This document shows positions 5,527 to 34,500 of a DNA stretch of 64,000 nucleotides, one piece after another. The notes under the pieces were generated by a model that saw only the letters and a list, made by a program, of their open reading frames with translations, had not been told where the DNA came from and ran no database searches. Position numbers and translations under genes: made by a program. The stretch's first letter is position 1. Every line of letters starts with the position of its first letter. The stretch lies in sequence record KJ019103.1; one strand, 5' to 3'.

Positions 5527-5528
5527 TT

Positions 5529-7645: not shown

Positions 7646-7646
7646 T

Positions 7647-9938: not shown

Positions 9939-10558
9939 GTTACTTCACAGATTATGACAACGAATTCACAGTATTCGAGGCACCAAAGAACGGGGGAACT
10001 ACTCTCCGTCTTTGGATATACTACGCAGGAACAGGGGAGTTGGTGAAGTCAGCGGAGTCTGAATACTACGCTGGCACTGGAGAAACATACAAACAACTCC
10101 AAGAGTGGGGTTATGTGAATGGGGAATACGAGAACCCCAAGACCCAGATGGTATGTATCAAGAGAGACCCTGTAGATAGGTTTGTAAGTGCCTTCTATGA
10201 TAAGGTAATCAAAGAGGGGAGAATCAAAGTAACCATCGATGAGTTTCTCTCAAACTATGAAGAGATACTTGATAAGTCTACCCTCAAGATGAATGATGGT
10301 AAGACTAACTTCATGAAGTTTCACTTTGAGTCACAGACATATCACTTTGGTAAAGATAGAGATCTATATCATAAGGTCTTTGATATCTCAGAGGTTGGTA
10401 CTGGTCTGAAGAAGTATCTGGAGAGTAAGTGGAATATAGAACTACCTGATGTCCATGCTAGAAATAGTGGTGGTGGTAGAAAGTTTGATCTCTCCAGGGG
10501 ACAACTGAATAAGGTGAAGGAAATCTACACACAGGACTATTATAATGGCTGGTACTGA
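9935..10558 (+). CDS. Sulfotransferase family 2-like protein
   Basis: PAPS-binding-like motifs APKNGGTT and KRDPVDRFVSAF. Confidence 0.75.
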   Translation: MSYFTDYDNEFTVFEAPKNGGTTLRLWIYYAGTGELVKSAESEYYAGTGETYKQLQEWGYVNGEYENPKTQMVCIKRDPVDRFVSAFYDKVIKEGRIKVTIDEFLSNYEEILDKSTLKMNDGKTNFMKFHFESQTYHFGKDRDLYHKVFDISEVGTGLKKYLESKWNIELPDVHARNSGGGRKFDLSRGQLNKVKEIYTQDYYNGWY

Positions 10559-12111: not shown

Positions 12112-13013
12112 CAAATAAATCATTGGTTACCGGTGGCGCGGGTTTCATCGGGTCACATATTGTGGACCGACTTATTACACTAGGACATCAAGTCGTAGTG
12201 ATTGACAATGAATCCTCTGATGGTCATGATGAATACCATTGGAACAGAAGCGGACAAGTACAAAACCATAAGGCAGACATTCGTGACTACGATGCAATCA
12301 AACACTTGTTTGGTGGAGTCAATAATGTTTTTCACCTTGCCGCTAAAGCATCAGTACAGGCGTCAGTAGATAACCCCCTACCAACTATTGCCACACAGGT
12401 AATGGGAACCGCCAATGTATTGGAGGCAGCACGACAATCTGGTGTGAGTAAGTTTGTATATTCCTCTACTAGTGCTTGTTATGGTAACAACAACCCCATT
12501 CCTAATGTAGAAACGATGAGAGAAGATCCTCTCAACGCCTATGCTATTGGTAAGTTATCTGGGGAACAACTAGTTCGTGCCTATCACTACCTCTATGGTA
12601 TGAAGACGGTGGCATTCCGTTATACCAATGTATATGGGGAGAGGGCAAGACATGTAGGACACTATGCTCCTGCTGTTAGTAAGTTCCTAAAGATGAGAGC
12701 ACAGGGAGAACCCCTAACTATCTTTGGTGATGGTGCCCAACGCCGGGACTTTATTCATGTATCTGATGTAGTCAACGCTAACTGCTGTATTACCTATGAG
12801 GAACTAGAGCAGTGGGGTGAGACCTATAACATTGGTTATGGTAAGAACTGGAGTATCCAAGAGATCGCAGACTCTATCAGTCAGGAACAGATTCACCTAT
12901 CTGCTCGTACTGGTGAGATGCGTGAGACGCTTGCTGATATTGGGAAGGCAAAGGCAGAGTTGATGTGGAAACCAAAGACTGACATCATGGATTGGATTAG
13001 GGTACAACTCTGA
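12108..13013 (+). CDS. NAD-dependent nucleotide-sugar epimerase/dehydratase (UDP-Glc/GlcNAc 4-epimerase-like)
   Basis: VTGGAGFIGSH, YxxxK (YAIGK) and IFGDGAQRRDFIHVSDVV. Confidence 0.9.
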   Translation: MTNKSLVTGGAGFIGSHIVDRLITLGHQVVVIDNESSDGHDEYHWNRSGQVQNHKADIRDYDAIKHLFGGVNNVFHLAAKASVQASVDNPLPTIATQVMGTANVLEAARQSGVSKFVYSSTSACYGNNNPIPNVETMREDPLNAYAIGKLSGEQLVRAYHYLYGMKTVAFRYTNVYGERARHVGHYAPAVSKFLKMRAQGEPLTIFGDGAQRRDFIHVSDVVNANCCITYEELEQWGETYNIGYGKNWSIQEIADSISQEQIHLSARTGEMRETLADIGKAKAELMWKPKTDIMDWIRVQL

Positions 13014-13630
13014 TGCCAGTATTTCAGAAGGACAACAAGAAAGTTCTATTCATCCATGTTCCCAAGACTGCAGGAAGTTCTGTGAATAAACTCTTTGTGA
13101 ATAATGGATATGAAATGTCCTACTATTCTGAGAGTTCTAAAGATCTATACAATGGATTATGTGGACCACAACATCTGGACTCACTTCTATTGGAAGATGA
13201 GTTCCAAGATTTCTCTCAGTTTGATTATATCTTCTCTATCTTCAGAGACCCAGTAGACAGACATCTATCTGAGTTCACCTGGGCACCCTGGGGACTAATG
13301 GGTAGAAACATCTACACACCAGAAAGATTTGATGAGTGGTGTCCTAAGATATTCAGAGCGTATCAGGACTCACCATATAGGATGGATAATCACATTAGAC
13401 CTCAACATGAGTTCTATGTCAATGGATGTGATGTGTATGACTATGAAAATATCAATACACTCACAGAGAAACTATGTGATAAAATAGGTCTAGATAATAA
13501 AGAGATGCCATATGAAAGGTCTTCACGATATGATAGTGAGGATTATGTCATCTATGAAGATACTTACAATTGTATTACTGAATTTTACAAAGGAGACTAT
13601 CAATGGCAAAAGGATTCAGTCCTGTTGTGA
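13013..13630 (+). CDS. Sulfotransferase family 2 protein
   Basis: LFIHVPKTAGSSV and FSIFRDPVDR. Confidence 0.8.
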   Translation: MPVFQKDNKKVLFIHVPKTAGSSVNKLFVNNGYEMSYYSESSKDLYNGLCGPQHLDSLLLEDEFQDFSQFDYIFSIFRDPVDRHLSEFTWAPWGLMGRNIYTPERFDEWCPKIFRAYQDSPYRMDNHIRPQHEFYVNGCDVYDYENINTLTEKLCDKIGLDNKEMPYERSSRYDSEDYVIYEDTYNCITEFYKGDYQWQKDSVLL

Positions 13631-14481
13631 CTAAGGATAAGAACAAGTCCCAGTTCAAACTACAGGGTGTTCCTAGGATTTACTACATCAGTTTAGATGA
13701 TCATGCTCATCGTCAAGACTATATGGAGTCCCAGTTTGAAGACTGGGGCATCACTAACTTCGAAAGAATCTCTGCTCATGATGGTAGAGGTGATAATGAT
13801 CTGAGTGATATTCTCAAAGGATCTTATCCAAAGATGATGACTTCTGGTGAGGTTGGTTGTGTGACCTCTCACCTAAAGGCACTCAAACACTGGTTAGATA
13901 CTACAGAGGATGAAGAGTTTCTCCTTATGATGGAGGATGATTGTGATATCTCCACTGCTGCCCACTGGGGTTTCTCCTGGAGGGAGTTTGTTGGGAATGT
14001 TCCATCCCATGTAGATTGTGTTCAGTTGGCAGTTATCAATCCAGCAGAACTACACATCAAAATCCATATCAGGTTTGTGAATGATTTCTCCACTGCCTCA
14101 TACCTAATCCGTAGATCACACGCGGAGAAGTTAGTTAGACTCTATTGTAGGGGTGATAAGTATAAACTTGATAGTGATATCAAACCCAGAGCAGTTGCTG
14201 ACGATCTTATCTACAACTCTGGTGTGACTCTTGCTATGCCACTGTTTGCATACAAGATCGCACTAGGTTCCAGTATCCATGATGTCCATATCAATACCTT
14301 CCACAAGAGTAGTCATGATGGTATCTGGGAGTTTTGGAAGAAAACAGCACCAACTATTGATAACTGGAAACCATTCTTCAACTATGATGCCTATCTGGGA
14401 ACCCTACCACCCAATGTTGTGGTTCAACAATGGCAGCAAAAACAGGAATCCAAGGCAAAAGATTCAGGGGCTTCGCAATAG
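13603..14481 (+). CDS. GT25 glycosyltransferase
   Basis: IYYISLD...RQDYM, FERISAHDG, GEVGCVTSHLKA and MMEDD. Confidence 0.85.
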   Translation: MAKGFSPVVTKDKNKSQFKLQGVPRIYYISLDDHAHRQDYMESQFEDWGITNFERISAHDGRGDNDLSDILKGSYPKMMTSGEVGCVTSHLKALKHWLDTTEDEEFLLMMEDDCDISTAAHWGFSWREFVGNVPSHVDCVQLAVINPAELHIKIHIRFVNDFSTASYLIRRSHAEKLVRLYCRGDKYKLDSDIKPRAVADDLIYNSGVTLAMPLFAYKIALGSSIHDVHINTFHKSSHDGIWEFWKKTAPTIDNWKPFFNYDAYLGTLPPNVVVQQWQQKQESKAKDSGASQ

Positions 14482-15380: not shown

Positions 15381-17795
15381 ATGGCATTTAAGATTAATGG
15401 CGTAGTACGCATTGATAATAGTGGCAACGGTTTTCTGGGAATTGTAACCGCTACCGACGCTAATATCACAGGAGTTCTCACTGCCACTGAGGTGGATGCG
15501 AAAGTATCATCTAAGGCAATAACTGAACAAACAGATGGAACCGTAGATGATGTAACTGGTGCAGATGAACTATTACTATTAGATGCTGAGACTGGTGGAT
15601 TACTAAGAGTATCAATAGATGAGTTCGTGCAGGGTTCAGGCATTGGAACTCTAGTAACGGACTTTGATAACTTAACTGTTACTGGTATCACAACCGTTGC
15701 CACCCTCAAAGGTATTGGATCTAATAACATCAGTGTAGGGAGCACACTTTCCTTTGCTGATGGTACAGAGATCATCATGGGTGACTCTGGTGACTTCAGT
15801 ATTCATCATGATGGTGACCATACTTACCTAGATGAGACGGGGCAGGGTAATCTAAAACTCCGTACAAATAACTTTAGAGTAACAAATATAGCAGAAACAA
15901 AACCAGCTATTACAGCACAGGTTACTTCTGGTGTTGAGTTGTATTTTGATGGTAATAAGAAGATAGAAACTACAAATACTGGTGTTCTTGTGAGTGGTAT
16001 GCTCACTGCTGATAGATTAAGATCAGGTGATATTGCTGCTAGAAATGTAATCACACTGGGTATTACCACTATCCAAGATCATTTGGAAGTGAATGATAGT
16101 ACTGGTTCTGGTACCGAATACAATCTCAATGTTAAGACCAATGGTAGTTCTACCTTTGGTGTCTTAGGTAATGGAAATATTCTACTTGGAAACAGTTCCG
16201 GTGCTCCATTCATGGCGACGAATGATCACCACGCAACTTCCAAGAAGTATGTGGATGATGCTATTGATGATTCCGTCAGCTACATCGGTGCTAGTGCTTG
16301 GGGTTCTTTTAATTCTGACGGGACGACTGAAGGTGCTTTCAACTGTAGTGCAACTAGAGGATCAGCAGGGGAATACGTGGTTACCTTTACCACTGCATTG
16401 TCTGATTCGGATTATGCAGTGAACGCCACTAGTAATGGCTCTAGTAATTATGACGTTTTTATTGATAATAAAGCAACGACAGGTTTTACAGTAAGCACTA
16501 GAAATGCGTTAAGTGCAAACGCCGGTGATCAGGCTTTTTGTGTATCCATCCACGGTGCTAATGCAATTGCACCGCCGTCAGGCGTAGGCGCTGACGCCTG
16601 GGGAACATTCTCTGGAACGACTGGCGACCTGCAAGCTGGGATGAATATCAGCTCAACTACACGTACTGCCCTAGGAGAATATGACGTAGAATTTATAACC
16701 GAGATGCCTTCGGACTCAGAATATGCCGTAACCGCAGTATCTAATGCAAGTCAAGCAAAGTTTATTAATATACGCAATAAGTCTACAAGTGGTTTTAAGG
16801 TTGTAACTAGAGATGGTTCTGGAAATATTTCTGACGGAGCCGTATCCTTTGCCGTCCACGCATCATCAACAGTCACGCCAACCTATACCTGGACACGCGA
16901 CGGCACAACGCTTAAGCCTGCTAATGATGGTGATGATGTAGAGGTGAACGGTCGGGGCCTTTTCGAAAGCAGCCAGCCGGCTGACTATGTTGTGAGAGTA
17001 AAAAACACCGACACAGGTACTATCAATCCCGCATGTTTGCTGCTGGACATGCGAGATGTTGACGCTTCTAATAATTATTCAGCCTTAAGGGTAGTAGGTT
17101 ACAACACTACAACAGGTCTTGATATAAATTCAGACGGCGCTATCACGGCTCAGGGGCAGATAACCGCAAACGTCAGTAACCAAGGCGGAGAGAATAGTGC
17201 AATCAAGGCAATTCAAACCAACTCCAACGGGTATGCGGTATGGGTTGGTGATGGACCTAACTCTACAGATAGAACCGCTTCTATAGGCCCTGATGGAAGA
17301 GCCACGTTTTCCTCCGGCAAAATTTCGCTGGGTCCGACCGGCTCGGGGACGTTTGCAGACAATAACATCTTCCTGCAGTCGGACGGACAAGTCAGATGCA
17401 CGAACGTAATTACATCTTCAGCTTTGGCAGGCTCAGGCACCAGACCATTATATGTCGACTCATCTGGTGGTTTAACTATCAGCTCTTCTGATCGTAGTTT
17501 GAAGACGAACATCACTACTCTTCCTGATCAGATACAAGTAGTCAAAGCATTAAATCCCGTTTCGTTTAATTGGATAGAGAAAGAAAGACTAGGTGCAGGT
17601 CTTGAAATTGGATTTATTGCTCAAGAAGTAGAAGAAATCGTTCCTGAGGTTGTTCGTAGCACTGCCGGAATACTTTCAGTAGATTATGCAAAATTAACCG
17701 CAACTTTAACGTCTGCCCTACAGGCAGCACTCACCCGCATCGAAGCCCTCGAAGCGAAAGTCCAATCACTCGAAGAAGGTGTGACACCTGACTAA
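15381..17795 (+). CDS. Tail fibre protein with C-terminal intramolecular chaperone (peptidase S74)
   Basis: Gly/Thr-rich fibre repeats, two tandem AWGxF...GEYxVxF domains, and SDRSLKTNI...IGFIAQEV...VDYAKL plus a coiled coil. Confidence 0.85.
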   Translation: MAFKINGVVRIDNSGNGFLGIVTATDANITGVLTATEVDAKVSSKAITEQTDGTVDDVTGADELLLLDAETGGLLRVSIDEFVQGSGIGTLVTDFDNLTVTGITTVATLKGIGSNNISVGSTLSFADGTEIIMGDSGDFSIHHDGDHTYLDETGQGNLKLRTNNFRVTNIAETKPAITAQVTSGVELYFDGNKKIETTNTGVLVSGMLTADRLRSGDIAARNVITLGITTIQDHLEVNDSTGSGTEYNLNVKTNGSSTFGVLGNGNILLGNSSGAPFMATNDHHATSKKYVDDAIDDSVSYIGASAWGSFNSDGTTEGAFNCSATRGSAGEYVVTFTTALSDSDYAVNATSNGSSNYDVFIDNKATTGFTVSTRNALSANAGDQAFCVSIHGANAIAPPSGVGADAWGTFSGTTGDLQAGMNISSTTRTALGEYDVEFITEMPSDSEYAVTAVSNASQAKFINIRNKSTSGFKVVTRDGSGNISDGAVSFAVHASSTVTPTYTWTRDGTTLKPANDGDDVEVNGRGLFESSQPADYVVRVKNTDTGTINPACLLLDMRDVDASNNYSALRVVGYNTTTGLDINSDGAITAQGQITANVSNQGGENSAIKAIQTNSNGYAVWVGDGPNSTDRTASIGPDGRATFSSGKISLGPTGSGTFADNNIFLQSDGQVRCTNVITSSALAGSGTRPLYVDSSGGLTISSSDRSLKTNITTLPDQIQVVKALNPVSFNWIEKERLGAGLEIGFIAQEVEEIVPEVVRSTAGILSVDYAKLTATLTSALQAALTRIEALEAKVQSLEEGVTPD

Positions 17796-17995: not shown

Positions 17996-19075
17996 ATGGC
18001 TTCAACACTTACACGCCGTCAAGGCGCATCTATCTGGGATCAGTTTTGTTCCTGGGTCACATCAACCAACAATCGTCTTTACGTCGGTTGGTTCGGTGTT
18101 CTAATGATTCCTACATTGTTAGCCGCAACTGTATGTTTCATTATCGCTTTCGTGGGTGCTCCCCCAGTGGACATCGACGGAATCCGTGAACCAGTAGCTG
18201 GTTCACTCATGTATGGAAACAACATCATCTCTGGTGCAGTTGTTCCTAGTTCAAACGCAATCGGTCTACACTTCTACCCAATCTGGGAAGCAGCCACACT
18301 CGACGAATGGCTCTACAACGGTGGTCCTTTCCAACTAGTTGTCTTCCACTTCCTTATTGGTATCTACGCCTATATGGGACGTGAGTGGGAACTCTCTTAT
18401 CGTTTAGGTATGAGACCTTGGATCTGTGTAGCATACTCTGCACCAGTTGCAGCAGCTTCAGCAGTATTCCTAGTCTATCCTTTCGGTCAAGGTTCATTCT
18501 CAGACGCGATGCCCTTGGGTATCTCTGGAACATTCAACTACATGTTGGTCTTCCAAGCAGAACATAACATCTTGATGCACCCCTTCCACATGTTGGGAGT
18601 CGCAGGTGTCTTCGGTGGTTCATTGTTCTCAGCGATGCATGGTTCACTTGTTACATCTTCACTCGTAAGAGAGACAACTGAAACAGAATCCCAGAACTAT
18701 GGTTACAAGTTTGGACAAGAAGAGGAGACCTACAACATCGTTGCAGCCCATGGCTACTTCGGTCGTTTGATCTTCCAATACGCCTCATTCAACAACTCAC
18801 GCTCACTCCACTTCTTCTTAGCCGCATGGCCAGTTGTGGGTATCTGGTTCACCGCACTTGGTGTTTCCACAATGGCATTCAACCTCAATGGTTTCAACTT
18901 CAACCAGTCCGTCATTGATGGACAAGGTAGAGTTCTTAACACCTGGGCGGATGTATTGAACAGAGCTGGTCTAGGTATGGAGGTGATGCATGAGAGAAAT
19001 GCACACAACTTCCCACTAGATTTGGCAGCAGCTGAGTCCACACCTGTGGCTCTAATTGCACCATCTGTTGGTTGA
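17996..19075 (+). CDS. psbA: Photosystem II D1 protein (uninterrupted)
   Basis: [29 protein letters not shown] and [15 protein letters not shown]. Confidence 0.99.
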
Positions 19076-19096
19076 TCACTCAACCTGTGATATGAT

Positions 19097-19130
19097 AAAA
19101 GGGGACTTCGGTCCCCTTTCTTTTTCTTTT
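19097..19130 (+). terminator. Rho-independent terminator after psbA
   Basis: aaaaggggac-ttcg-gtcccctttcttttt. Confidence 0.85.
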
Positions 19131-19145
19131 GTAATGTAAAGTTTT

Positions 19146-19376
19146 ATGTCCCACGATCTAATCGAATTGCTCACTTACTATGTGATCGGTGGTGCCCTTA
19201 TCATAGGACCACCCGCTATCTTTCTCATCATTGCTATGATGGCAGCACTCCAAAATACGAAAGGTCGCATGGTTGGATACAAAGATCACAAAACTTATGG
19301 TGATTCATCTATCTACGATCCGGCACCAAAATTGCCAGTAGATCAAACAAAATTCTTCCTGGAACTTAACAACTGA
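19146..19376 (+). CDS. Small single-TM hypothetical protein between psbA and psbD
   Basis: Hydrophobic N-terminal half; ORF fills the intergenic space. Confidence 0.65.
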   Translation: MSHDLIELLTYYVIGGALIIGPPAIFLIIAMMAALQNTKGRMVGYKDHKTYGDSSIYDPAPKLPVDQTKFFLELNN

Positions 19377-19387
19377 GGTAAACAAAA

Positions 19388-20443
19388 ATGACGACAAGTA
19401 CACTTACAACACCACAAAGGGGGTGGTATGATATTTTGGAGGATTGGCTTCAGAGAGATAGGTTTATCTTTATTGGCTGGTCTGGATTACTACTTCTTCC
19501 CACTGCTTATCTTGCCATTGGCGGCTGGCTTACTGGCACAACTTTTGTCACGAGTTGGTACACCCATGGTCTTGCTTCTTCCTATCTTGAGGGTGCTAAC
19601 TTTCTCACGGCGGCTGTCTCGACTCCTGCTGATGCTATGGGTCATTCTCTTCTTCTACTTTGGGGTCCTGAATCTCAGGGCGACTTCCAGCGGTGGCTCC
19701 AACTTGGAGGGCTTTGGTCCTTTGTTGCTCTCCACGGTGCCTTCGCTTTAATTGGATTCATGCTTCGTCAGTTTGAACTGTCACGACTCATTGGTATCCG
19801 TCCCTACAACGCTATTGCATTCAGTGGTCCTATCGCTGTATTTGTCAGTGTGTTTCTTCTATACCCACTAGGTCAATCTTCCTGGTTCTTTGCCCCCTCC
19901 TTTGGTGTGGCAGCAATCTTTAGATTCCTATTGTTTCTTCAGGGTTTCCACAACTGGACACTGAACCCCTTCCATATGATGGGAGTTGCTGGTATACTAG
20001 GTGGAGCACTACTATCTGCAATCCATGGCGTTACTGTTGAAAATACCCTATATGAAGATGGAGAACAGAATAACACCTTCACTGCGTTCGATTCCACCCA
20101 GGAGGAAGAGACCTATTCGATGGTTACTGCGAACCGCTTCTGGTCGCAAATCTTCGGGGTTGCGTTTAGTAATAAGCGTTGGCTTCACTTCTTTATGTTG
20201 TTTGTTCCTGTCATGGGTCTTTGGGTCTCAAGTATTGGGATCATTGGGCTTGCTCTTAATCTTCGTGCTTATGATTTTGTGAGCCAAGAGATTAGAGCAG
20301 CAGAAGATCCTGAGTTTGAAACTTTCTACACAAAGAACATCCTTCTTAACGAAGGACTAAGAGCATGGATGGCACCTGTGGATCAACCACATGAGTCATT
20401 TGTATTCCCAGAAGAAGTTCTACCTAGAGGTAACGCATTGTGA
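19388..20443 (+). CDS. psbD: Photosystem II D2 protein
   Basis: [25 protein letters not shown] and [12 protein letters not shown]. Confidence 0.99.
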
Positions 20444-20685
20444 TTAACGCACTCTTCACTTTTATATTTGCTGCGGTGATGTGGGTGCAAGTCCCACAGT
20501 GGCAGGATGATTGGTCTAAGTGCGCAGTAGATGTACCTGATGTTCAATGTCATTGGTATATCACAGCACCCGATAGCACCATGGGTGAAGGATTTAGTTG
20601 GGCGAATGCCCCTTGGTTCAGTGCTGAAGGTCTCCTTGATATTGGAGAACTTCACAACACAGTTCAATCACTTCAGGAGGCATGA
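20440..20685 (+). CDS. Hypothetical secreted/membrane protein
   Basis: GTGA overlap with psbD; signal-like N-terminus. Confidence 0.6.
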
Positions 20686-20897
20686 TGAATATATTATTTT
20701 TAGTATTATACTTCGTCTGCTTCTGTCTCATTGCAGGTGGTGCCGCAGCTATGATGTATGCAAACATACAATCTATCTGGAACACACCACCCGCTCCACC
20801 TAAACCAATTCATCCTGAGGCACCTGTAGCAGGTGAAGAGGTTATGTATGTCGATCTAACAAGAGAAAAACTGGAAGATTTGTACCATGAACATTGA
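20682..20897 (+). CDS. Small membrane protein (DUF2973-like)
   Basis: TM helix followed by IHPEAP...EVMYVDL; family assignment is from memory. Confidence 0.55.
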   Translation: MMNILFLVLYFVCFCLIAGGAAAMMYANIQSIWNTPPAPPKPIHPEAPVAGEEVMYVDLTREKLEDLYHEH

Positions 20898-21009
20898 ATA
20901 CCTTTTAGGTTGGGTTGCTATTCTTGTTTTGTTTATAGCAACACAGAATACTGATGATGACGATGATCCAGAAGGTGGTATGATGGTTCCTTCCACTCAA
21001 TCTACATAA
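20887..21009 (+). CDS. Small membrane protein (40 aa; DDDDDPEGGMMVP); not in the ORF track
   Basis: TM helix plus acidic tail; ends before the terminator. Confidence 0.55.
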   Translation: MNIEYLLGWVAILVLFIATQNTDDDDDPEGGMMVPSTQST

Positions 21010-21015
21010 CAAAAC

Positions 21016-21047
21016 TACAAGGGGATTGCTAACAATCCTCTTTTTTT
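21016..21047 (+). terminator. Rho-independent terminator
   Basis: aaggggatt-gctaac-aatcctcttttttt. Confidence 0.7.
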
Positions 21048-21131
21048 GTGTCGTTATTTTGTTTGATTGTTATATATTGTGTGTATTCTCACACAAACCA
21101 TATACATAGAGTGTAGAACAAGAGGAGTATT

Positions 21132-21332
21132 ATGTTATCGCATAATCTTATTTCGCATAACCAATTAGAAGGTTGGCGAGAATCTTTTCAGAAGATAGAT
21201 AAATCTACCAATAGAACAACAGACGAACTAAACCTAATTAATGATTACTATGATTGCTTAATAGAGTGTGATGATAACCAATCAGCATGTAAGCGTATCT
21301 GTAAACATGTATTGACATCTCCACCAATTTAA
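21132..21332 (+). CDS. Small protein with CxxxC..CxxxC motif
   Basis: GAGGAG RBS; YYDCLIECDDNQSACKRIC; followed by a terminator at about 21344-21371. Confidence 0.7.
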   Translation: MLSHNLISHNQLEGWRESFQKIDKSTNRTTDELNLINDYYDCLIECDDNQSACKRICKHVLTSPPI

Positions 21333-21371
21333 ATATGTTAGAATGGAGGGTATAACAACCCTCCTTTTTTT

Positions 21372-21539
21372 ATGCGATTCGATTTAACCATGGATGATTA
21401 TGCCATCATCCTCAACGCATTACACTATTATAAGAAAGTAGAGAAGCGTGGCAACTTCAAGCAGTATAATGAGGAGCGAGTTAACGATCTTAGGGACCGA
21501 ATGGCCCACCAAATCGTCTGGGAACAGGGTGAAGAGTAG
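21372..21539 (+). CDS. Small hypothetical protein (55 aa); not in the ORF track
   Basis: MRFDLTMDDYAIILNALHYYKKVEKRG... Confidence 0.55.
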   Translation: MRFDLTMDDYAIILNALHYYKKVEKRGNFKQYNEERVNDLRDRMAHQIVWEQGEE

Positions 21540-21654
21540 CAAATACCACCATTTTCAGGAACCTCTCACCAAACCTTTGGGATACACTATGGGAAAACGG
21601 GTTGTTGATCGCCTATAATAAGGGGGTAGAACACAACTGGAGAGAAAATCCACT

Positions 21655-22038
21655 ATGAAAATCCAACAATCAATGCTTCGTCGTCTTGCCGCTAAGAAGG
21701 GAAAGAAGCAGAACGGATTCACACTAATTGAACTGATGGTGGTTGTTGCTATCGTTGGTGTATTGTCGGCTGTTGGTCTCCCTCAGTTGTTGAAAGCACA
21801 AGACCGAGCAAAGATCTCAGTAGCACAACAGGAAGCAGTCAACTACGCTAAAGAGTGTTCTATCTCCATTCTTACAGGTGGTGATGGTCCTGTCGTTGCT
21901 AACTTTTCAACAGTTCCTGCCGACCAAACCTGTGCCGCTGGTACTGATGTAACCGCTTTATCTGATACTGAGACAGTAGTAACCTGGACAGTAGAAATGG
22001 AAGGCGGCATCCCTGGCGTTCCTTCTTCCGATGAGTGA
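21655..22038 (+). CDS. pilA: Type IV pilin (prepilin with class III signal peptide)
   Basis: Basic leader, then G^FTLIELMVVVAIVGVLSAVGLP; C-terminal Cys pair. Confidence 0.9.
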   Translation: MKIQQSMLRRLAAKKGKKQNGFTLIELMVVVAIVGVLSAVGLPQLLKAQDRAKISVAQQEAVNYAKECSISILTGGDGPVVANFSTVPADQTCAAGTDVTALSDTETVVTWTVEMEGGIPGVPSSDE

Positions 22039-22044
22039 TCTATT

Positions 22045-22608
22045 ATGAACCTAATGTCCACCATGGTGGGACTTAGCATCATGGGGGCTTCTGCCCCCGC
22101 TATGATGAAAATGTCCATGGCACCATATGAAGCACAACTAAGAGCACAAAACCTAGGTGTAGCCGAAACTGCTGCTGTAGTATTCGCCGCTACTTACGAA
22201 GGTAAGCTCGAACTCCCAGAAGATACAGACACCTGTGTATCAAAACTACGTGAAGGTACTGCAAACGCTTTTAGCGTTACCTGTACTGAAGGTGATGGTA
22301 GGTATGTTCAGTCTGTAACTCGTGCATTCCGTCTAGCTGTTCCCGATGAAGGACTAGACGGTGGTAATGCAACTGATACAAGCAGAGAGTTTGCATTTGA
22401 AACTCCTACTCGTTTCTCAGGACACCAATGTCCTGGTTATGATTCCTGGGGAGTCAACGGTTACAATGACAAAAACTACTCTGCCTTAGGTGGAGCTTGT
22501 ATTCCTAACGATGGATGGAATCAAACTAATTATCAGTTCTCTGATCCAGACGCTTGGCTTTATGACATCAACAACCGTAATGGTTGGGGAGCACATCCTG
22601 ACTACTAA
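22045..22608 (+). CDS. Pilin-like/minor pilin-like protein lacking a cleavable leader
   Basis: N-terminal hydrophobic helix MNLMSTMVGLSIMGASAP; Cys pairs; adjacent to pilA. Confidence 0.5.
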   Translation: MNLMSTMVGLSIMGASAPAMMKMSMAPYEAQLRAQNLGVAETAAVVFAATYEGKLELPEDTDTCVSKLREGTANAFSVTCTEGDGRYVQSVTRAFRLAVPDEGLDGGNATDTSREFAFETPTRFSGHQCPGYDSWGVNGYNDKNYSALGGACIPNDGWNQTNYQFSDPDAWLYDINNRNGWGAHPDY

Positions 22609-22790
22609 TGATTGAGTTACTCGCATCTAGCATTATCATTTACGGTAATGCCAACGGGGTGTGGTCTCCCTCACATCCCGATATTTATCCTTATTCAGAA
22701 CCACCTACACGAGTAGAAAAACCTGAAATTCCAAAAACATCTACGACTAGCGGAAATGGAGATATCATTTTCCCTCAACTATTAGAATAA
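22608..22790 (+). CDS. Small hypothetical protein, coupled to the pilin-like gene
   Basis: TAATG overlap; begins MIELLASSIII. Confidence 0.55.
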   Translation: MIELLASSIIIYGNANGVWSPSHPDIYPYSEPPTRVEKPEIPKTSTTSGNGDIIFPQLLE

Positions 22791-22810
22791 CTAAAACTAG
22801 GAAACACACA

Positions 22811-22834
22811 CAGGAGGGAAACCCTCCTTTTTTT
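22811..22834 (+). terminator. Rho-independent terminator closing the pilin operon
   Basis: caggaggg-aaa-ccctccttttttt. Confidence 0.75.
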
Positions 22835-22849
22835 GTGCTATAATTATAA

Positions 22850-23149
22850 GTGAGTTGTGAGATTTCTATGGACGAAAGAATAAGAACTTTATATGTCTTT
22901 CAGTCGGATGATCGTCTTATAACTCATGACGGGCATGTCCAACTAGGTTGTCATAACATGACCATGGAAAAGTTTATGTCTTTCGATAGGGAGAATATCC
23001 GATACATCGAAACCTACTGGTTGCCTGATGTATTTGGAAATAGGTATAAGCGTTCTAACTTCCAAGCACACCAGAGGGTATCTGGGGAGAAGGGTGTATT
23101 AGAACTATCTAATAACCAACCAGGAAACAGACTTGATAGGTCTGTATAA
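22850..23149 (+). CDS. Hypothetical protein
   Basis: ORF after a TGCTATAAT element. Confidence 0.6.
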   Translation: MSCEISMDERIRTLYVFQSDDRLITHDGHVQLGCHNMTMEKFMSFDRENIRYIETYWLPDVFGNRYKRSNFQAHQRVSGEKGVLELSNNQPGNRLDRSV

Positions 23150-23387
23150 GGCACCTATATACACAAAAAGGATTCCTATGGGACCTATAATTGTATTTGC
23201 TTGTTTTCTACCTATAGTTGCTATATTCATTGTAATAAAACTAGCTGTTTGGGTAGAAGCTGTTAACTCCGAAACAAACTATGTCAGAGAAGAATCTTCA
23301 AGACAACGAGGACCTTGGGTGGAAAACCCATATGAGGATATTGATGTTGAGGAAGAGGAGTATGGAGATCGCACAGACTATCGATGA
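23133..23387 (+). CDS. Small membrane protein (probable start 23178)
   Basis: TM helix PIIVFACFLPIVAIFIVI plus acidic tail. Confidence 0.55.
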   Translation: MIGLYKAPIYTKRIPMGPIIVFACFLPIVAIFIVIKLAVWVEAVNSETNYVREESSRQRGPWVENPYEDIDVEEEEYGDRTDYR

Positions 23388-28536: not shown

Positions 28537-31500
28537 ATGATCTCAACAGCGACTAAGATTAAATTTAAAAGGTCTGGTGTAGCCGGACGTAGACCCTCCT
28601 TAGCTGATCTTCAGTTAGGTGAATTGGGGATCAATTATAACGATGGTAAACTATTTTTCCGACAGGAAAATGAAGTAGTTGGCTCTCGTATCATTGAACC
28701 TGGACAGGGTGATGTAATCGGTAAGACTATTTTCGTATCCACAAAGGGTAACGATAACAATAGTGGTCTTAACGAAAGAGATGCCAAGAGAACTGTTAAA
28801 GCGGCCGCCGCAGTAGCAGAACCTGGTGACTCCATCAAACTGTATCCAGGTCAGTACATCGAAGATAACCCTATCGTATTTAAGGATAGGGTATCTGTAG
28901 AGGGTATGGAGCTTCGTAACGTTCTCGTTACTCCAGCCAACCCCAGTAAAGACTTGTATCAAGTTGGTGAGGCGTTCCACGCTACCAACCATTCCTTTGT
29001 GTCCAATAGGGATTCAACAGATGGTGCCTCTATTATCACCTATCGTCCTCTAGAGGGAACTGCGTCTGACAGGTATTTTGACGCGGCTAGACTCATCAGG
29101 GACAATCTTAGCTTCATTGCTAACGAGACAGTAGGTTTCCTAACCAGTGGATATTCAGGCTTTGCCGCTGGTCAGAGATCACAGGACGCTGCTCGTGCTC
29201 TAGAACTAAACAAGAACTTCATAGTAGAAGAAGCATTTCAATATATCAACTCTCCTGATTATACAGGAGCCACATACTTCAACCCAGACCCAGCACAGTG
29301 TAAGAGAGACCTAGGAAATATCATTGATGGTTGGAGATATGATCTCATCTCTGATGGTAACACCAGATCTACTGGTCTTGGTCTAACCTACTACGCACCT
29401 ATTCCCTTTGTGAATAGTGCTAATGTTGCTGACCTTGTATACAACAGAAATAACGGTGATGTTCTAATTGAAACCGACGTAGATACACAGGTTTCAGTTG
29501 GTGAGAAGATCAAACTACAGGATATCAGACTAGAGTGTGGTTCCTACAATAACGACTTCTTTATCACTGGTTTCAAGTATGATAACACCAGTGGTATTGG
29601 AACAGTTAATCTACCCTTTATCCATAACGTCAAGGTTGGAGACCTTGTTAAGTTTGATGGTTTAGAGTTTGATTGTCCTGCCTATGGTGCCATTGAATAT
29701 GGTATCCAAGACTTCAAGTATAATGAAACTACTGGTGGAAGTGTTGTCACACTCACCGAAGATCATGATCTAAAGATTGGTGACACCATTGAACTAAGAG
29801 ACCTTCAGTTCGATTGTCCCGCCTATGGTGGTGACTTCACTAACATCATCAACCTAGAATACAATAAGACCAGTGGTCAGGGTGTTATCACATATGACAA
29901 ACCCGCCGATCTCAAGTCTGGTGACGTTGTTATCCTCTATGACCTCACACTAACTTGTGATGCTTATGGTAACGCTATCTCAGTTACTGATTTCTCTTAT
30001 GATAACTTCACTGGTATCACTGAAGTAGAAGTAAATAGACCCCACAACCTCCGTCCCGGAGACCTAATCAAACTAGAGAACCTTAAGTTCTCTTGTGATT
30101 CCTACCTTAATGAAACATACAAGGTCTCTAACTTTGTATATAATGAGAGCACTGGTGATAGTGTCCTCACCCTAACTGAACCACATAGTTTAGTTGCTGG
30201 TAAGAACGTCAGACTTGCTGACCTAGTTTTCTCCTGTAACTCCTATGTTCCAACCGCTAAAGCAATCTCTGATTTCCAGTATGATGAAGTAGTTGGTATC
30301 TCTACTATTACTCTAGCATCTCCACACAACTTATCAGTTGGTGAGCAGTTCAGACTAGAGGATTTAGTATTCTCCTGTAACTCATATTCCTTCACTGATA
30401 TTCCTATCATTGATGCACCATATGATAATGTAACTGGTTATGTAACCCTATCGTTCTCTGGTGACCACGGACAACAGGTTGGTGAGAGAGTAAGACTCAG
30501 AGATATTGAGTACTCCTGCCCTGGTGGTTCAGGTATCACTACAACCTTGTTCCCCGATGGAACCTTTGGTTATGAGTTTGAAATCCTAAGTGTTCCAAAC
30601 ACTAAGAAGATGATTCTTAATGTTGGCACCTCCACTATTGAACACTCCTATGTGAGTGGTGGTACTGCTACCGTTGGTATTACAACTACTATCTTCCCTG
30701 ATGGAACACAAGGTTTCGACTTCAATGTATCCAGTGTTAATAGTTCCACTGTTATCGAAGCAAGTGTTGGTATTTCTACCATCGCTCACAACTATGTTTC
30801 TGGTGGATCATTATTCGTTGGTTTCACTACCACAGTATTCCCCGATGGAACACAAGGTGATACCTTCAGAGTTAATTCTATTCCTTCTAGCACTCAAATC
30901 AGTGTTAATGTTGGTGTATCTTCTATCGCCCATACTTTCGTATCCGGTGGTACAGCAACTGACCTAGACTCTTTCATCCCTGTATCTGGTTTCACCTACA
31001 ATGAAGGTGACGGAACTGGACTAGTATCCCTAGACAAGGCACACAACCTAGTGGTTGGTGACTCTTTTGTTCTAGAGGATCTTAAGTTCAACTGTAACTC
31101 CTACAGAACAGGTGGTACTTCTACTATTGATATCACTAACTTTGAGTATGATAAGGTAACCGGACTATCTACAGTCACACTATCTTCTTCACACAACCTA
31201 CATGTTAATGATACCGTAGCACTATATGATATCAAGTTCTCTTGTCCTGGTGGTTCAGGTATTACAACTAATATCTTCCCCGATGGAACCAGAGACAACT
31301 TCTATGATGTAGTTGCTGACCTAAACCCCAACCAGATTATTGTTCGTGTTGGTAAGTCTGACATTACTCACACATACGCTAGTGGTGGTAGTCTATCCGT
31401 TGGTATCACTACTAACATCTTCCCTGATGGAACTAGACCTTCTGGTGACTTCTTCCAGGTTATCTCTGTTCCTTCTACCAAGTCTGTTCTAACTCAGGTT

Positions 31501-34500
31501 GGTCTATCCTCTATCGCTCACTCATACGCAAGTGGTGGTAAGTTCTACACTGGTATCACTACTAATGTATTCCCACAGGTATTCACCGACCCCAACATCA
31601 AGGTAACCAACGCTGTATATGACGAAGTATCTGGTGTTATCACCATTACTACTAACAAGGCACACGGACTTACCGCTACCGCACCTGTTCTACTACAGGA
31701 TCTAAACTTCTCTTGCCTCTCTGGTGGTGTAGGAAACACCCCAGGCAACCTTGTGTTCCCCAGGAACCAGGAAGTTTATGATGTTGTGTCCGTTCTATCT
31801 ACTACACAATATACGATCAATGTAGGTCCTTCTGACTTCGCTCACGCATATGTTGATGGTGGTACTTCTACCACACAGAACATCACTAAGGCATCCTACA
31901 ACAAAGGAACTGGTGATCTAACAGTAACCCTAGACAAGCAACACGGTTATTCAGTTGGTGATCGTGCTAGTGTGGTTGATCTCCTCTTCTCCTGTCAGTC
32001 TGGTGGTCCTAACAACCAACCTGGAACACTTCTATTCCCCAGACCTACTGATGAGTATGAAGTTCTATCTGCAAGTGGTAAGACACTCACAGTTAATGTT
32101 GGAGCGTTCCCATCACTAGTTCATACCTATAAGAATGGTGGATCACTAACCTATAGTTCTACTGTACTTCCTGTAAGTAACGCAGTTTATGATCAATCAA
32201 CTGGAGTTCTAACACTTACCACATCAATTGCACTAGGGGCACCTGTTGGTTCTACCATTAAGATGCAGGGTCTAAACTTCTCCTGTGCCTCTGGTGGTCC
32301 TGGTAATGACGCTGGTGCTATTGTATTTCCAAGACTAGACACTCCTACCTTCAAGGTTAAGGAAGTCAAGAGTGGTGTATCCTATGTTATCAATGTAGGA
32401 ACCTCTACACTCTCACACACATATACATCTGGTGGTTTCTCCTCACTCAAGAAGTTGAAGAACGACCCCAATATTTTCAAAGTTATCGACACCCCAACAC
32501 CTAGTAAGGTTATTACTAATGTAGGTGTCTCATCTATCGCTCATGACTATGTGAGTGGTGGTAATATGTTCGTGGGTATCACCACTAATGTATTCCCTGA
32601 TGGAACTCGCCCTGATGGAAGTAGGTTCGAAGTTATCTCCGCCCTATCACCCAACCAGGCACTCATCAACATCGGTGTTTCTACTATCACCCACAACTAC
32701 GATAGTGGTGGTAGGATGCAGTATGGTACTACCAATGAGAGACCTGTTCTAGACTTCCTATACGATGGTCAGACTGGTATCTCCACTGTAACTATTAGAG
32801 GAACTCATGGTTTGAACCAGGGTGACCTAGTGAAACTCAGAGGTCTTGAGTTCGCTTGTACTAACTCACCTGGTATTACAACTACTATCTTCCCAGATGG
32901 AACTGCCGCTGGTCTCAATATCTACAAGGTTACTGAGATTATTAGTAACAGTACCTTCAAGACAAATGTAGGTAGAGTTGGATTCGATCATACTTACATC
33001 CAAGGTGGTTCCGCTTTCGTTGGTATCACTACTAACATCTTCCCAGATGGAACACAAGGTTACAACTATACAGTTGCCGCCATTCCTAATAAGAATCAGG
33101 TAACAGTTGATGTGGGTATCTCCAGTATCCAACATGATTATATTCGTGGTGGATCACTATTCTCTGGTAAGACTAACGAGAGAGATATCGCAGACTTCAA
33201 GTATGATCACATCTCTGGTGATGCGGTTCTTACCTTCAGAAAGGCACAGAACTTATTCACACAAGATCTAGTAAAACTTAAGAACCTTCAGTTTGATTGT
33301 CCAAACTCTACTGGTATCACTACTACTCTCTTCCCAGACGGAACCAGAAGTAACCTCTTCCTAATCAAGGAGAGACTAAACCCAACACAGTTCAAACTCA
33401 ATGTTGGCACTTCACCATTCGGTCATGACTATGTGAGAGGAACAGGTCAGGCATTCGTTGGTATCACTACTAACATCTTCCCTGATACCAAGACACAACC
33501 AAGTAAGTTATTCAAGGTTGTTGATGTCCCAACTCCTACTACTATCTCCGCCAAGATTGGTGTATCCACTATCTCCCACTCATATGTTAAGGGTGGTAAG
33601 GTATTCGTTGGTATTAACACTGATATCTTCCCTGGAGATGAGCAAGTATCACCACTAGGTGACACATATACAGTTCAGAGTATCACTAAAGATGGTGAGT
33701 TGGTTATCAATGTTGGACTATCTTCTATCAGTCACTCCTATGGTGGCGGTGGTAAGGTTCTATATGGACAGAGTTCTGGTAACAACCTACAACATATCAC
33801 TGGTCCTGGTGTCCTAGATGCAACCATCGCCGCTGTGGACTTCGAGAAACAGGTAGCAATCAACGCACTAAACAACAGACCTTGGGGTTCATTCGTTCCT
33901 GAAGAGACTGCTGTTGTGGAGGCGTTCGCCTATGATAACCAGACTGGTTTCGGAACAGTAACTGCTAGAGGAATCAACGTCAACACTGGTGACACCATCA
34001 GAATGAGTGACATTCAGTTTGTTTGTTCTGAGGAATACGCAGGTGTAACCACTACCTTCTTCCCTGATAATACTAGACCAGAGGGTCAGTACTTTAGAGT
34101 AGAAAGAAGAATCAACATCGATGAGTTTGAAGTTAATATTGGTGTTTCTACTATCAAACACGTATTCAACTACGAAACAGGTGGTAACGTATATCGTTAC
34201 AGACAGTCTATTCTAGATGTTAACTACGATAGATCCAGTGGTATCACTAGTATCCGAGCAACCAAGCATGGTTACAAGGCGAAAGATATCGTGGAACTAG
34301 GTGATATCGAGTTCGATTGTCCCGTATTCAAACCTCAATATGATATTGAGAACTTTGTTTATGATAACACAACTGGTCTATCCACAGTTACTACTACTGT
34401 AGATAACACTATCAAGGTAGGTGACAATGTAAAACTAGCAGACATCAAACTAGAGTGTCCTCCATATGGTAACCAGAGAGTTATTGATAACTTTGTTTAT

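What the first reader, a model, noticed from the sequence alone, without database searches (positions are those of the whole stretch)
21655..22038. Phage-encoded type IV pilin with an intact PilD cleavage site
Seen: MKIQQSMLRRLAAKKGKKQNG^FTLIELMVVVAIVGVLSAVGLPQLL, a canonical class III signal with E5, a cyanobacterial-style long basic leader and a C-terminal disulfide pair. It has its own upstream TATAAT and an operon terminator at 22811. No assembly genes are present. Inference: the pilin is processed by host PilD and enters or poisons host pili. This could block pilus-dependent competitor phages, or change buoyancy, aggregation, grazing or DNA uptake of the infected cell.
Basis: partly seen in the sequence, partly recalled or inferred. 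Interest (0 to 1): 0.7.

Follow-up and report, generated by a model that had tools for sequence, protein, structure and literature searches.

The report
Cyanophage pilin cassette shared with hosts
A lytic marine cyanophage carries a ready-to-process pilus-subunit gene fused to a partner gene. The same cassette sits in the chromosomal pilus locus of some Synechococcus hosts, so the phage probably re-surfaces the infected cell's pili, most likely to control which phages can dock on them.

Summary
Window 21655-22038 encodes a 127-aa type IV prepilin with a 21-residue basic leader, Gly-1, Phe+1 and Glu+5. The gene is not new: the window is Synechococcus phage ACG-2014f (KJ019103.1), where it is already annotated "pilin" (PHROG 3433).

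- The pilin is always coupled (gap -3 to +7 nt) to a 187-aa four-cysteine protein, ORF2 (22045-22608). This holds in 49/49 phage records and 67/68 metagenome loci.
- Its nearest named cellular relatives are picocyanobacterial PilA1. The phage protein lacks one disulfide loop.
- The pilin-ORF2(-ORF3) cassette also occupies the chromosomal pilA1 locus, between the minor-pilin operon and lepA, in several Synechococcus-like contigs. Its pilin is also the PilA1 entry of strain PROS-9-1. In the host contigs its GC3 is phage-like, and host ORF2 copies are scattered among phage copies in the tree.
- Within the near-clonal ACG-2014f population only the exposed pilin domain is hypervariable.

No pilus assembly genes are annotated in the phage. 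The best reading is that host machinery assembles the phage pilin and swaps the pilus surface, as the prophage FimU-like proteins of Pseudomonas do. Processing, assembly and the payoff are all untested.

The parts
21345..21364 (+). Terminator-like hairpin that closes the upstream unit. It marks the left boundary of the interval holding the cassette.
   Evidence: 7-bp stem with 5 G-C pairs, followed by a T run.
21372..21539 (+). Small ORF (55 aa, phrog_835, function unknown) lying between the upstream terminator and the pilin. It may be co-transcribed. It also sits in front of the pilin in the ACG-2014f-like loci L091 and L092.
21614..21619 (+). TATAAT string 36 nt upstream of the start codon. 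There is no -35 element and it is not called as a promoter.
21655..22038 (+). Type IV prepilin gene (127 aa), annotated 'pilin' AIX32447.1. Leader: 21655-21717. Predicted cleavage between Gly21 and Phe22. Alpha1 helix: residues 24-74. Small beta-sheet: residues 99-125. Conserved Cys68 and Cys93.
21755..22038 (+). Hypervariable segment of the pilin gene, covering the end of alpha1 and the exposed globular domain. Nucleotide identity between ACG-2014f alleles is 36-76% here, inside flanks that are 99-100% identical.
22045..22608 (+). ORF2 (187 aa, phrog_3415), the obligate partner of the pilin. It has no leader and no Glu5; its first charged residue is at position 22. The model shows an N-terminal helix (residues 3-51) and a 3-stranded sheet that are pilin-like only in a moderately confident model. 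It has four conserved cysteines and a C-terminal half rich in Trp/Tyr/Asn/Gly/Asp.
22608..22790 (+). ORF3 (60 aa, phrog_3533), an optional third cassette gene. It is 53% identical to the third ORF of the host-chromosomal cassette in L181. Other lineages have an unrelated small ORF here, or none.
22812..22835 (+). Intrinsic-terminator-like hairpin plus T run that closes the cassette.

Best explanation
The locus is a three-gene pilus-fibre cassette: a PilA1-class prepilin, its obligate partner ORF2, and an optional ORF3. It belongs to a gene pool shared between T4-like cyanophages and the chromosomal pilA1 locus of marine Synechococcus.

Proposed mechanism in an infected cell:
1. The prepilin is inserted into the inner membrane.
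2. The host prepilin peptidase cuts it after Gly21.
3. The host PilB/PilC/PilQ machine and host minor pilins polymerise it, alone or mixed with host PilA1. ORF2 acts as its dedicated partner, for example as a priming or tip subunit.
4. The pilus stays functional but displays a phage-chosen surface.
5. The most likely payoff is control of pilus-mediated phage docking. Rival pilus-binding cyanophages are excluded, and the phage's own progeny are not wasted on already infected cells or debris.

Shown: sequence features, fold, pairing, synteny, population pattern, and phage-host sharing.
Inferred: processing, assembly, ORF2's role, and the payoff.
For: - Processing site: complete and invariant class III signal.
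- Conservation profile of a filament subunit: in alpha1N the commonest residue holds a 0.99 share, against 0.67 in the globular domain.
- Fold: lollipop model with pLDDT 78. Top structural matches are pilins from cryo-EM filaments (Shewanella PilA, probability 1.00; Thermus PilA4).
- Cellular relatives: the nearest named ones are picocyanobacterial PilA1, at 41-43% identity over 88 aa spanning the leader, alpha1 and the first Cys. P0359 matches the MIT9313 PilA1 that was detected in the exoproteome.
- No assembly genes are annotated in the phage genome.
- Pairing with ORF2: 49/49 phage records, 22/22 phage loci and 67/68 metagenome loci, with a gap of -3 to +7 nt.
- Host copies: the same cassette sits between the minor-pilin operon and lepA in the cellular contigs L181/L176, L136 and L172. 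That is the slot holding canonical PilA1 in genome L098. The 'PilA1' of cultured strain PROS-9-1 is of this class, and the strain has PilC/PilQ/PilB.
- Transfer signal: the cassette's GC3 is 0.36-0.48 against 0.55-0.69 for host flanks, and host ORF2 copies are polyphyletic among phage copies.
- Hypervariability is confined to the exposed domain in a near-clonal population, while differences within allele A are synonymous only.
- The hosts are piliated, and S-CAM7, which carries the cassette, binds pili most strongly.
- Precedents: P-FimU and SNJ2 pilins.
Against: - There are no expression, processing or incorporation data for any cyanophage copy. The promoter class, and so the timing, is undetermined.
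- Pili are not S-CAM7's essential receptor. Resistance maps to galE/LPS, and the pilus-less mutant lyses like wild type in monoculture. The benefit of exclusion may therefore be small.
- Pilin alleles assort independently of the adjacent tail-fibre variants, so no co-adaptation with that fibre is visible.
- ORF2 has no detectable similarity to pilins and no significant structural match. The C-terminal half of its model is unreliable.
- Hypervariability could partly reflect a recombination hot region, since psbA and psbD nearby are also mosaic.
- No PADLOC defence model matches.
- The direction of phage-host transfer rests on composition and a distance tree only.
Confidence: 0.5

Rival explanations
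1. Maintenance gene, following the same logic as phage psbA. Infection shuts off host pilin synthesis, and the phage supplies a pilin (plus ORF2) so that the infected cell keeps its pili. The cell therefore stays suspended in the light and protected from grazers until lysis. Phage-phage competition plays no part.
For: - The cassette lies in the host-like gene region, between psbA/psbD/hli and talC.
- Host pili give flotation and grazing protection.
- The pilin is PilA1-class, and the cassette can occupy the host pilA1 locus.
Against: - Simple maintenance does not predict discrete, hypervariable allele classes of the exposed domain inside a near-clonal phage population.
- It also does not predict a protein that lacks a host surface loop.
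- Only two cyanomyovirus genera among 50,697 phage records carry the cassette, unlike the widespread maintenance genes.
Confidence: 0.2
2. Dominant-negative block. The pilin and/or ORF2 jam the assembly platform or cap the fibre, so infected cells lose pili or freeze them. That removes a docking site for later phages.
For: - Phages are known to shut down type IV pili for superinfection exclusion (papers listed). Truncated phage PilA-like proteins have been suggested to act this way.
- ORF2 has a leaderless hydrophobic N-terminus with no Glu5, which could act as a non-extendable subunit.
Against: - The cassette replaces PilA1 in host chromosomes that keep their minor pilins. In PROS-9-1, PilC/PilQ/PilB are also retained.
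- The exposed domain is under allele-class diversification, which implies it is seen from outside.
- The pilin keeps every feature needed for polymerisation.
Confidence: 0.1
3. ORF2 is the real effector. The pilin forms a short fibre or pseudopilus whose job is to display or export ORF2, a disulfide-bonded, possibly carbohydrate-binding protein. ORF2 would then change adhesion, aggregation or surface chemistry of the infected cell.
For: - ORF2 is better conserved than the pilin's globular domain (commonest-residue share 0.80-0.84 against 0.67).
- It has four conserved cysteines and an aromatic/Asn/Gly/Asp-rich C-terminal half.
- There is a faint, non-significant similarity to beta-propeller lectin repeats (E 0.28).
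- The coupling to the pilin is strict.
Against: - No significant family, structure or fold match exists for ORF2.
- The C-terminal model is unreliable.
- Nothing indicates secretion.
Confidence: 0.1
4. Passenger. A host gene pair picked up by recombination and carried without any function in the phage.
For: The region is recombination-prone, and the cassette also exists in hosts.
Against: - Both genes are intact in 49 phage records from two genera and in many metagenomic lineages. Only one possibly broken copy was seen.
- Within allele A, 26 other records differ only synonymously.
- The GC3 is fully phage-like.
- The processing site is invariant.
Confidence: 0.03

Closest known systems
Prophage-encoded FimU-like minor pilins (P-FimU) of Pseudomonas aeruginosa phages, and the PilA-like proteins the same study noted in virulent phages (Sztanko et al., Cell Rep 2026, PMC12952977)
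   Same: A phage-encoded type IV pilus structural subunit with no assembly genes. It is incorporated by the host machine, leaves the pilus working and blocks pilus-binding phages. The proteins are highly diverse, which the authors attribute to phage-versus-phage competition. The authors also note that PilA-like genes occur in non-temperate phages.
   Different: - The protein here is a major-pilin (PilA1) class protein, not a tip minor pilin.
- It sits in a strictly lytic T4-like cyanophage.
- It is always fused to an uncharacterised partner, ORF2.
- The cassette is also resident at a host chromosomal pilus locus.
- No function has been tested.
- Whether this family is one of their 'four groups' (their Table S3) could not be checked, because the supplement is not held.
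PilA1 (with PilE) of marine Synechococcus and Prochlorococcus, the flotation and anti-grazing pilus (Aguilo-Ferretjans et al., Nat Commun 2021, PMC7994388)
   Same: - Long basic leader, GFTLxE site and a near-identical alpha1N helix.
- The conserved 'AKEC' cysteine and its partner.
- A hypervariable exposed C-terminal domain.
- The host copies of the cassette occupy the same chromosomal slot.
   Different: - The phage-class pilin is shorter: 106 aa mature, against about 140.
- It lacks the loop carrying the second cysteine pair.
- It is followed by ORF2 rather than by a canonical prepilin such as PilE.
- Identity to the MIT9313-type PilA1 is only 41% over 88 aa.
Viral pilins of the archaeal pleolipovirus SNJ2 (Cell Rep 2025, PMC12426801)
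   Same: The virus carries pilin genes but no PilB/PilC. Host machinery assembles them, and they become surface filaments that determine the adsorption of another virus.
   Different: This is an archaeal, temperate, integrated virus. There the pilins serve as the receptor for a partner virus (a mutualism) rather than as a shield. No sequence relationship was tested or is expected.
Phage proteins that switch off type IV pili for superinfection exclusion (those acting on PilB or PilC; reviewed in PMC11436027; Pf phage example PMC8764522)
   Same: The same proposed goal: to stop further pilus-dependent phages from reaching an already occupied cell.
   Different: Those are small inhibitors of the motor or platform and abolish piliation. 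The protein here is a complete structural subunit with an exposed, diversifying domain. No homology was found, and there were no PADLOC hits.
Host-like auxiliary genes of cyanomyoviruses (psbA, psbD, hli, talC), which flank the cassette
   Same: A host-derived gene kept in the same hyperplastic region, with phage-like codon composition and mosaic recombination.
   Different: This is a surface structure gene rather than a metabolic one. It is rare (two genera), and the flow appears to run from phage to host as well.

Membership tests
Type IV prepilin (class III signal peptide; Pfam PF07963, TIGR02532) | Short basic leader ending in Gly, then Phe/Met at +1 and Glu at +5, opening a roughly 20-residue hydrophobic helix | tested here: met
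   The leader is 21 aa with 7 K/R, followed by G-1, F+1 and E+5. These positions are invariant in 89 relatives.
Type IV prepilin (class III signal peptide; Pfam PF07963, TIGR02532) | Profile score above the curated cut-off | tested here: met
   PF07963 scores 39 bits against 21.2. TIGR02532 scores 36.9 against 16.3.
Type IV prepilin (class III signal peptide; Pfam PF07963, TIGR02532) | Lollipop fold: a long N-terminal alpha helix packed on a small antiparallel beta-sheet | tested here: met
   The AF2 model has pLDDT 78, with a helix at residues 24-74 and strands at 99-125. The top Foldseek hits are filament pilins 9laa (probability 1.00, E 4.6e-3, TM 0.45) and 6xxd. The profile also hits 21 solved pilins.
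Type IV prepilin (class III signal peptide; Pfam PF07963, TIGR02532) | Cleavage and N-methylation by the prepilin peptidase, and polymerisation into a filament | not testable with these tools
   This needs proteomics or structural work on infected cells.
Picocyanobacterial PilA1 (major pilin of the flotation pilus) | Closest cellular relatives are PilA1 proteins | tested here: met
   P0359 (Prochlorococcus MIT1320; it matches the MIT9313 PilA1 listed in PMC7994388 Supplementary Data 1) and P0493 (a Synechococcus) are 41-43% identical over 88 aa.
Picocyanobacterial PilA1 (major pilin of the flotation pilus) | Located at the chromosomal pilA1 slot, next to the minor-pilin operon | tested here: met
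   This holds for the host-borne copies of the same class: L181/L176, L136 and L172, between the minor pilins and lepA, as for PilA1 in L098. PROS-9-1_0647 is listed as PilA1. The phage copy itself lies in the phage's host-like gene region.
Picocyanobacterial PilA1 (major pilin of the flotation pilus) | Full globular domain with two cysteine pairs (the MIT9313 type), and a canonical PilE-like prepilin next door | tested here: not met
   The phage class has a single Cys pair and lacks a loop of about 25-30 residues. The neighbour is ORF2, which is not a prepilin. It is therefore best called a distinct short subclass, not an orthologue.
Type II secretion major pseudopilin GspG | TIGR01710 score above the cut-off | tested here: not met
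   It scores 38.1 bits against a cut-off of 88.85, and the match covers the N-terminal helix only.
Prepilin family, as applied to ORF2 (22045-22608) | Gly-1 cleavage site, Glu+5 and an N_methyl profile match | tested here: not met
   ORF2 has no leader, its first charged residue is at position 22, and there is no Pfam or NCBIfam hit. hhalign against the pilin family finds nothing.
Prepilin family, as applied to ORF2 (22045-22608) | Pilin-like fold | tested here: inconclusive
   The helix at 3-51 and three strands are modelled at pLDDT about 70-87, but the whole model scores 57. The best suggestive hit is a chain of a type II pseudopilus model (probability 0.77, E 0.22).
Phage-encoded pilus-subunit replacement for anti-phage defence (P-FimU type) | Incorporation into the pilus without loss of function, and protection against pilus-binding phages | not testable with these tools
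   Only circumstantial support is available: surface hypervariability, host-locus occupancy and pilus binding by S-CAM7.
Known anti-phage defence systems (PADLOC) | A match to any PADLOC model | tested here: not met
   None of the three proteins has a hit.

The most novel reading that the evidence does not exclude
The cassette is a mobile 'pilus serotype' module that shuttles between lytic cyanophages and the pilA1 locus of their hosts.
- Phages would use it to re-coat the pili of the infected cell, so that pilus-binding rivals and their own progeny cannot dock.
- Hosts would repeatedly capture phage copies as ready-made escape alleles.

Cyanophages would then be a direct source of the extreme pilin diversity seen in marine picocyanobacteria. 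ORF2 would be a new kind of leaderless fibre-priming or tip subunit that makes the cassette self-sufficient on any host machine.
Probability: 0.3. Interest if true: 0.8.

Novelty: new variant of a known kind. Interest (0 to 1): 0.62.

Why it matters
Type IV pili keep a quarter of marine picocyanobacteria afloat and protect them from grazers. They were recently reported to be docking lines for cyanophages.

A lytic cyanophage that brings its own major-pilin cassette would add a new layer to phage-phage competition in the ocean, and that cassette is traded with the host's own pilus locus. It would also offer a concrete origin for host pilin hypervariability, and extend the newly described 'replace a surface component' defence from Pseudomonas prophages to abundant marine viruses.

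The idea is directly testable with existing strains: WH7803, its pilus-less derivative, PROS-9-1 and S-CAM7. It also flags ORF2, a widespread protein (468 clusters) with no known family, as a probable new pilus component.

Tried and rejected
- **ORF2 as phage-specific.** I first concluded this, because its profile was absent from 81 cellular pilin loci and from the host protein tables. The metagenome scan overturned it: four cellular contigs carry the cassette.
- **Genome-collection scan with the pilin.** It returned no cyanobacteria.
- **ORF3 as a conserved third member.** Rejected across lineages, then partly reinstated: the window type recurs in host L181 at 53% identity.
- **ORF2 as a diverged pilin paralogue.** The profile-profile comparison was negative.
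- **Co-variation of pilin alleles with the adjacent tail-fibre gene.** Not found.
- **Viral structure library and PADLOC.** Nothing informative.
- **Confounding of the preprint's result.** I asked whether a phage pilin could explain its 'pili enriched in infected single cells' finding. It cannot, because they scored pilB and pilC.
- **Recent whole-allele transfer between sampled hosts and phages.** Not seen. The best identity is 57-78% overall and 49-74% in the globular domain.
- **Source names for 30 representative proteins.** No organism names were returned.
- **Disulfide geometry.** It could not be measured because model coordinates are not exposed.
- **PROS-9-1 pilin against phage allele C.** I compared these by eye only. 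I did not paste the paper's sequence into any tool.
Full report
**Identity of the window and the gene.** The window is the last 64 kb of Synechococcus phage ACG-2014f isolate Syn7803US44 (KJ019103.1). This is a T4-like cyanomyovirus (Kyanoviridae, Atlauavirus), and bases 21000-23200 match the record at 100% identity. It is already annotated 'pilin' (AIX32447.1) and belongs to PHROG 3433 'pilin' (E 5.9e-78). So the gene's existence is known. I found no paper in the searchable library that discusses it.

**Checking the observation.**
- The leader is 21 residues with 7 K/R and no acidic residue. It is followed by Gly-1, Phe+1 and Glu+5, and the mature protein is 106 aa.
- Pfam N_methyl and TIGR02532 both pass their curated cut-offs. 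Full-length equivalog models (Myxococcus-type PilA, PpdD, GspG) do not pass and match only the N-terminal helix.
- The AlphaFold model (pLDDT 78) is a classic pilin lollipop. Its best structural matches are pilins from cryo-EM filaments. A family profile hits 21 solved pilins.
- The terminator at 22812-22828 is confirmed.
- The TATAAT at 21614-21619 is present, but it has no -35 element, is not called as a promoter, and is only loosely conserved in position across lineages. An upstream terminator at 21345-21364 and a small ORF at 21372-21539 make co-transcription equally possible.
- The two cysteines (68 and 93) are conserved, but they are central rather than C-terminal.
- No pilB, pilC, pilD, pilM-Q or pilT is annotated anywhere in the 218-kb genome.

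**The pilin is never alone.**
- The 187-aa ORF2 (22045-22608; PHROG 3415, no Pfam or NCBIfam family) is found in exactly the same 49 of 50,697 phage records as the pilin. These are ACG-2014f and S-CAM7, which belong to two genera.
- In every phage locus that includes the upstream DNA (22 of 22, counting IMG/VR contigs), ORF2 starts -3 to +7 nt from the pilin stop. The same holds in 67 of 68 metagenome loci. The single exception has only the pilin's C-terminal part in an open frame.
- ORF2 has 468 relatives at 90% clustering. It has four conserved cysteines and a hydrophobic N-terminus with no leader, no Gly-1 and no Glu+5. Its C-terminal half is rich in Trp/Tyr/Asn/Gly/Asp.
- Its model is confident only for an N-terminal helix (3-51) and a three-stranded sheet. 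The only suggestive fold hit is a chain of a type II pseudopilus model, which is not significant. It shows no profile similarity to the pilin.
- ORF3 (22608-22790) is optional. Other lineages carry an unrelated small ORF, or none.

**Origin.**
- An exhaustive representative search returned a 2-Cys, roughly 130-aa class and a 4-Cys, 140-180-aa class. Every member of the 2-Cys class that I could place sat on a cyanophage contig at that stage.
- The 4-Cys class is cellular (L096, L098). It includes named proteins of Prochlorococcus MIT1320 and a Synechococcus.
- The MIT1320 protein matches the MIT9313 PilA1 listed in PMC7994388 Supplementary Data 1, which is the pilin detected in that strain's exoproteome.
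- The phage pilin aligns with these proteins at 41-43% identity over 88 residues. The alignment runs through the leader, the cleavage site, alpha1 and the first cysteine. The phage protein then lacks a host loop of about 25-30 residues that carries a second cysteine pair.
- Its GC3 (0.375) is phage-like, so it is not a recent import.

**The cassette also lives in host chromosomes.** This overturned my interim conclusion that ORF2 is phage-specific.
- A metagenome scan with the ORF2 profile found four loci of 49-54% GC: L181 and the near-identical L176, plus L136 and L172.
- In them a short pilin, ORF2 and (in L181) a 72-aa ORF lie between a divergently transcribed minor-pilin operon and lepA. 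The operon includes GspH-like and N_methyl proteins and, in L181, is preceded by a histidine kinase.
- The same flanks bracket the canonical PilA1 and five further genes in the complete picocyanobacterial genome in L098.
- L181's GspH-like protein is plainly the orthologue of Syn_PROS-9-1_0651. The 'PilA1' of the cultured strain PROS-9-1 (0647) is the only entry in that table with the phage-style GFTLIELM motif. By eye it belongs to the phage class and resembles phage allele C. No PilE or PilA2 is listed for that strain, while PilC, PilQ and PilB are present.
- L181's third ORF is 53% identical to the window's ORF3.
- In the host contigs the flanking genes have GC3 0.55-0.69, but the cassette has 0.36-0.48, as in phages.
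- Host ORF2 copies are not monophyletic. Their common ancestor spans 69 of 85 tips in a distance tree, and their nearest neighbours are phage-context copies at 76-86% identity.
- Host pilin alleles are 57-78% identical to the nearest sampled phage-side alleles, so no very recent whole-allele transfer was sampled.
- The simplest reading is repeated exchange, with at least some transfers running from phage to host. This rests on composition and a simple tree only.

**Population pattern.**
- Three pilin alleles coexist in ACG-2014f. Flanking DNA is 99-100% identical, but identity falls to 36-63% within 21755-22038 and recovers inside ORF2.
- Allele A is identical at protein level in 27 records, even though its 3' 284 nt differ by 2-3 substitutions. 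Those differences are therefore synonymous.
- Allele A's globular region is 87% nt-identical to that of S-CAM7, a phage of another genus, while ORF2 is only 69% identical at protein level.
- Across 89 relatives, alpha1N is almost invariant (commonest-residue share 0.99) and the globular domain is variable (0.67).
- Pilin alleles assort independently of the three variants of the tail-fibre gene 4 kb upstream.
- This is the signature of a filament subunit whose exposed face is under allele-class diversification.

**Biological context from the literature.**
- WH7803, the isolation host of both phage groups, makes abundant PilA1-PilE pili that provide flotation and grazing protection. Its authors proposed that pilin hypervariability is an escape from phage (PMC7994388).
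- A 2025 preprint reports that cyanomyoviruses bind these pili. S-CAM7 does so most often (median 70%, against 43-44% for S-PM2 and S-RSM4) and selects most strongly against piliated cells. It never mentions a phage pilin. I did not verify that S-PM2 and S-RSM4 are in the phage collection, but no record other than ACG-2014f and S-CAM7 matched the pilin.
- Pili are not S-CAM7's essential receptor, because resistance maps to galE.
- Two experimental precedents exist for virus-encoded pilus subunits without assembly genes. Archaeal SNJ2 pilins are assembled by host PilB/PilC. Pseudomonas prophage FimU-like proteins enter the pilus, leave it functional, block tip-binding phages and are highly diverse. 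The same paper notes PilA-like genes in virulent phages. Its supplement is not held, so I could not see whether this family is listed there.

**Mechanism.** I commit to pilus-surface replacement. The host peptidase and machine process and assemble the phage pilin, ORF2 serves as its dedicated partner, and the pilus keeps working with a phage-chosen surface. The most probable payoff is control of pilus-mediated docking by rival phages and by the phage's own progeny.
- I put about 0.7 on 'functional prepilin assembled by the host machine' and about 0.5 on the whole statement.
- The rivals are pilus maintenance for flotation (0.2), a dominant-negative block (0.1), ORF2 as a displayed or exported effector (0.1), and a neutral passenger (0.03).
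- Host-locus occupancy and surface hypervariability argue against the block and the passenger. Hypervariability and rarity argue against simple maintenance.
- Nothing here shows expression, cleavage or incorporation.

**Novelty.** The gene is already annotated, and the kind (phage-encoded pilus subunits) is known. Four things appear new: the obligate pilin-ORF2 cassette, its residence at the host pilA1 locus with phage-like composition, the allele-class hypervariability inside one phage population, and the link to a pilus-binding cyanophage.

Noticed in passing
window 4528-14481: A large cluster of sugar-nucleotide and glycosyltransferase genes: GDP-mannose 4,6-dehydratase, epimerases, heptose epimerase, and glycosyltransferase families 11, 6 and 25. 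A further set lies near window 57036-58642. It is a second gene set able to alter cell-surface or virion glycans, and S-CAM7 resistance maps to LPS (galE).
   Followed up: no
window 15381-17795: The annotated tail-fibre gene is mosaic in the ACG-2014f population. Megablast coverage falls into three classes (89-100%, 57-67% and 37%). These classes assort independently of the pilin alleles.
   Followed up: partly
window 18655-19654: psbA and the 5' part of psbD show local drops to 77-93% nt identity between isolates that are otherwise 99-100% identical. This is a recombination mosaic next to the cassette.
   Followed up: no
L002 5001-5948 (S-CAM7, NC_031927.1): The RefSeq 'pilin' CDS starts at an internal Met and omits the leader and cleavage site, although in-frame homology begins about 75 nt upstream. 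ORF2 is likewise annotated about 60 nt short. Three other S-CAM7 records call the pilin 'hypothetical protein'.
   Followed up: partly
window 21563-21575: A C-rich box of about 12 nt, upstream of the AT-rich box, is shared by four phage lineages in front of the pilin (window, L005, L091, L093). It may be a regulatory element.
   Followed up: no
L097 2597-3328: A 56.7% GC phage-like contig, with a portal-like DUF4055 protein and many small ORFs, carries a related prepilin-domain protein of 243 aa without ORF2. Five further PHROG families also match the prepilin N-terminus. Pilin-like genes therefore occur in several unrelated phage groups.
   Followed up: no
window 20440-20685 and 20887-21009: Two tiny ORFs (81 and 40 aa) are annotated 'carboxylesterase' in GenBank. 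The annotation looks doubtful for proteins of that size.
   Followed up: no
window 28537-40440: A single 3,967-aa ORF annotated 'hypothetical protein'. It is followed by further very large ORFs that include a 'baseplate wedge initiator'.
   Followed up: no
P0143, P0150, P0156, P0161, P0174, P0195 (ORF2 relatives): A subset of ORF2 proteins carries an extra C-terminal tail of about 30 residues, rich in Gly/Asn/Ser and containing additional cysteines.
   Followed up: no
P0251 (Tara Oceans surface sample) and other metagenomic pilins: Phage-class pilins are present in ocean gene catalogues. Environmental pilA1 counts based on a pilin profile could include cyanophage copies. The 2025 preprint's single-cell analysis is not affected, because it scored pilB and pilC.
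   Followed up: partly
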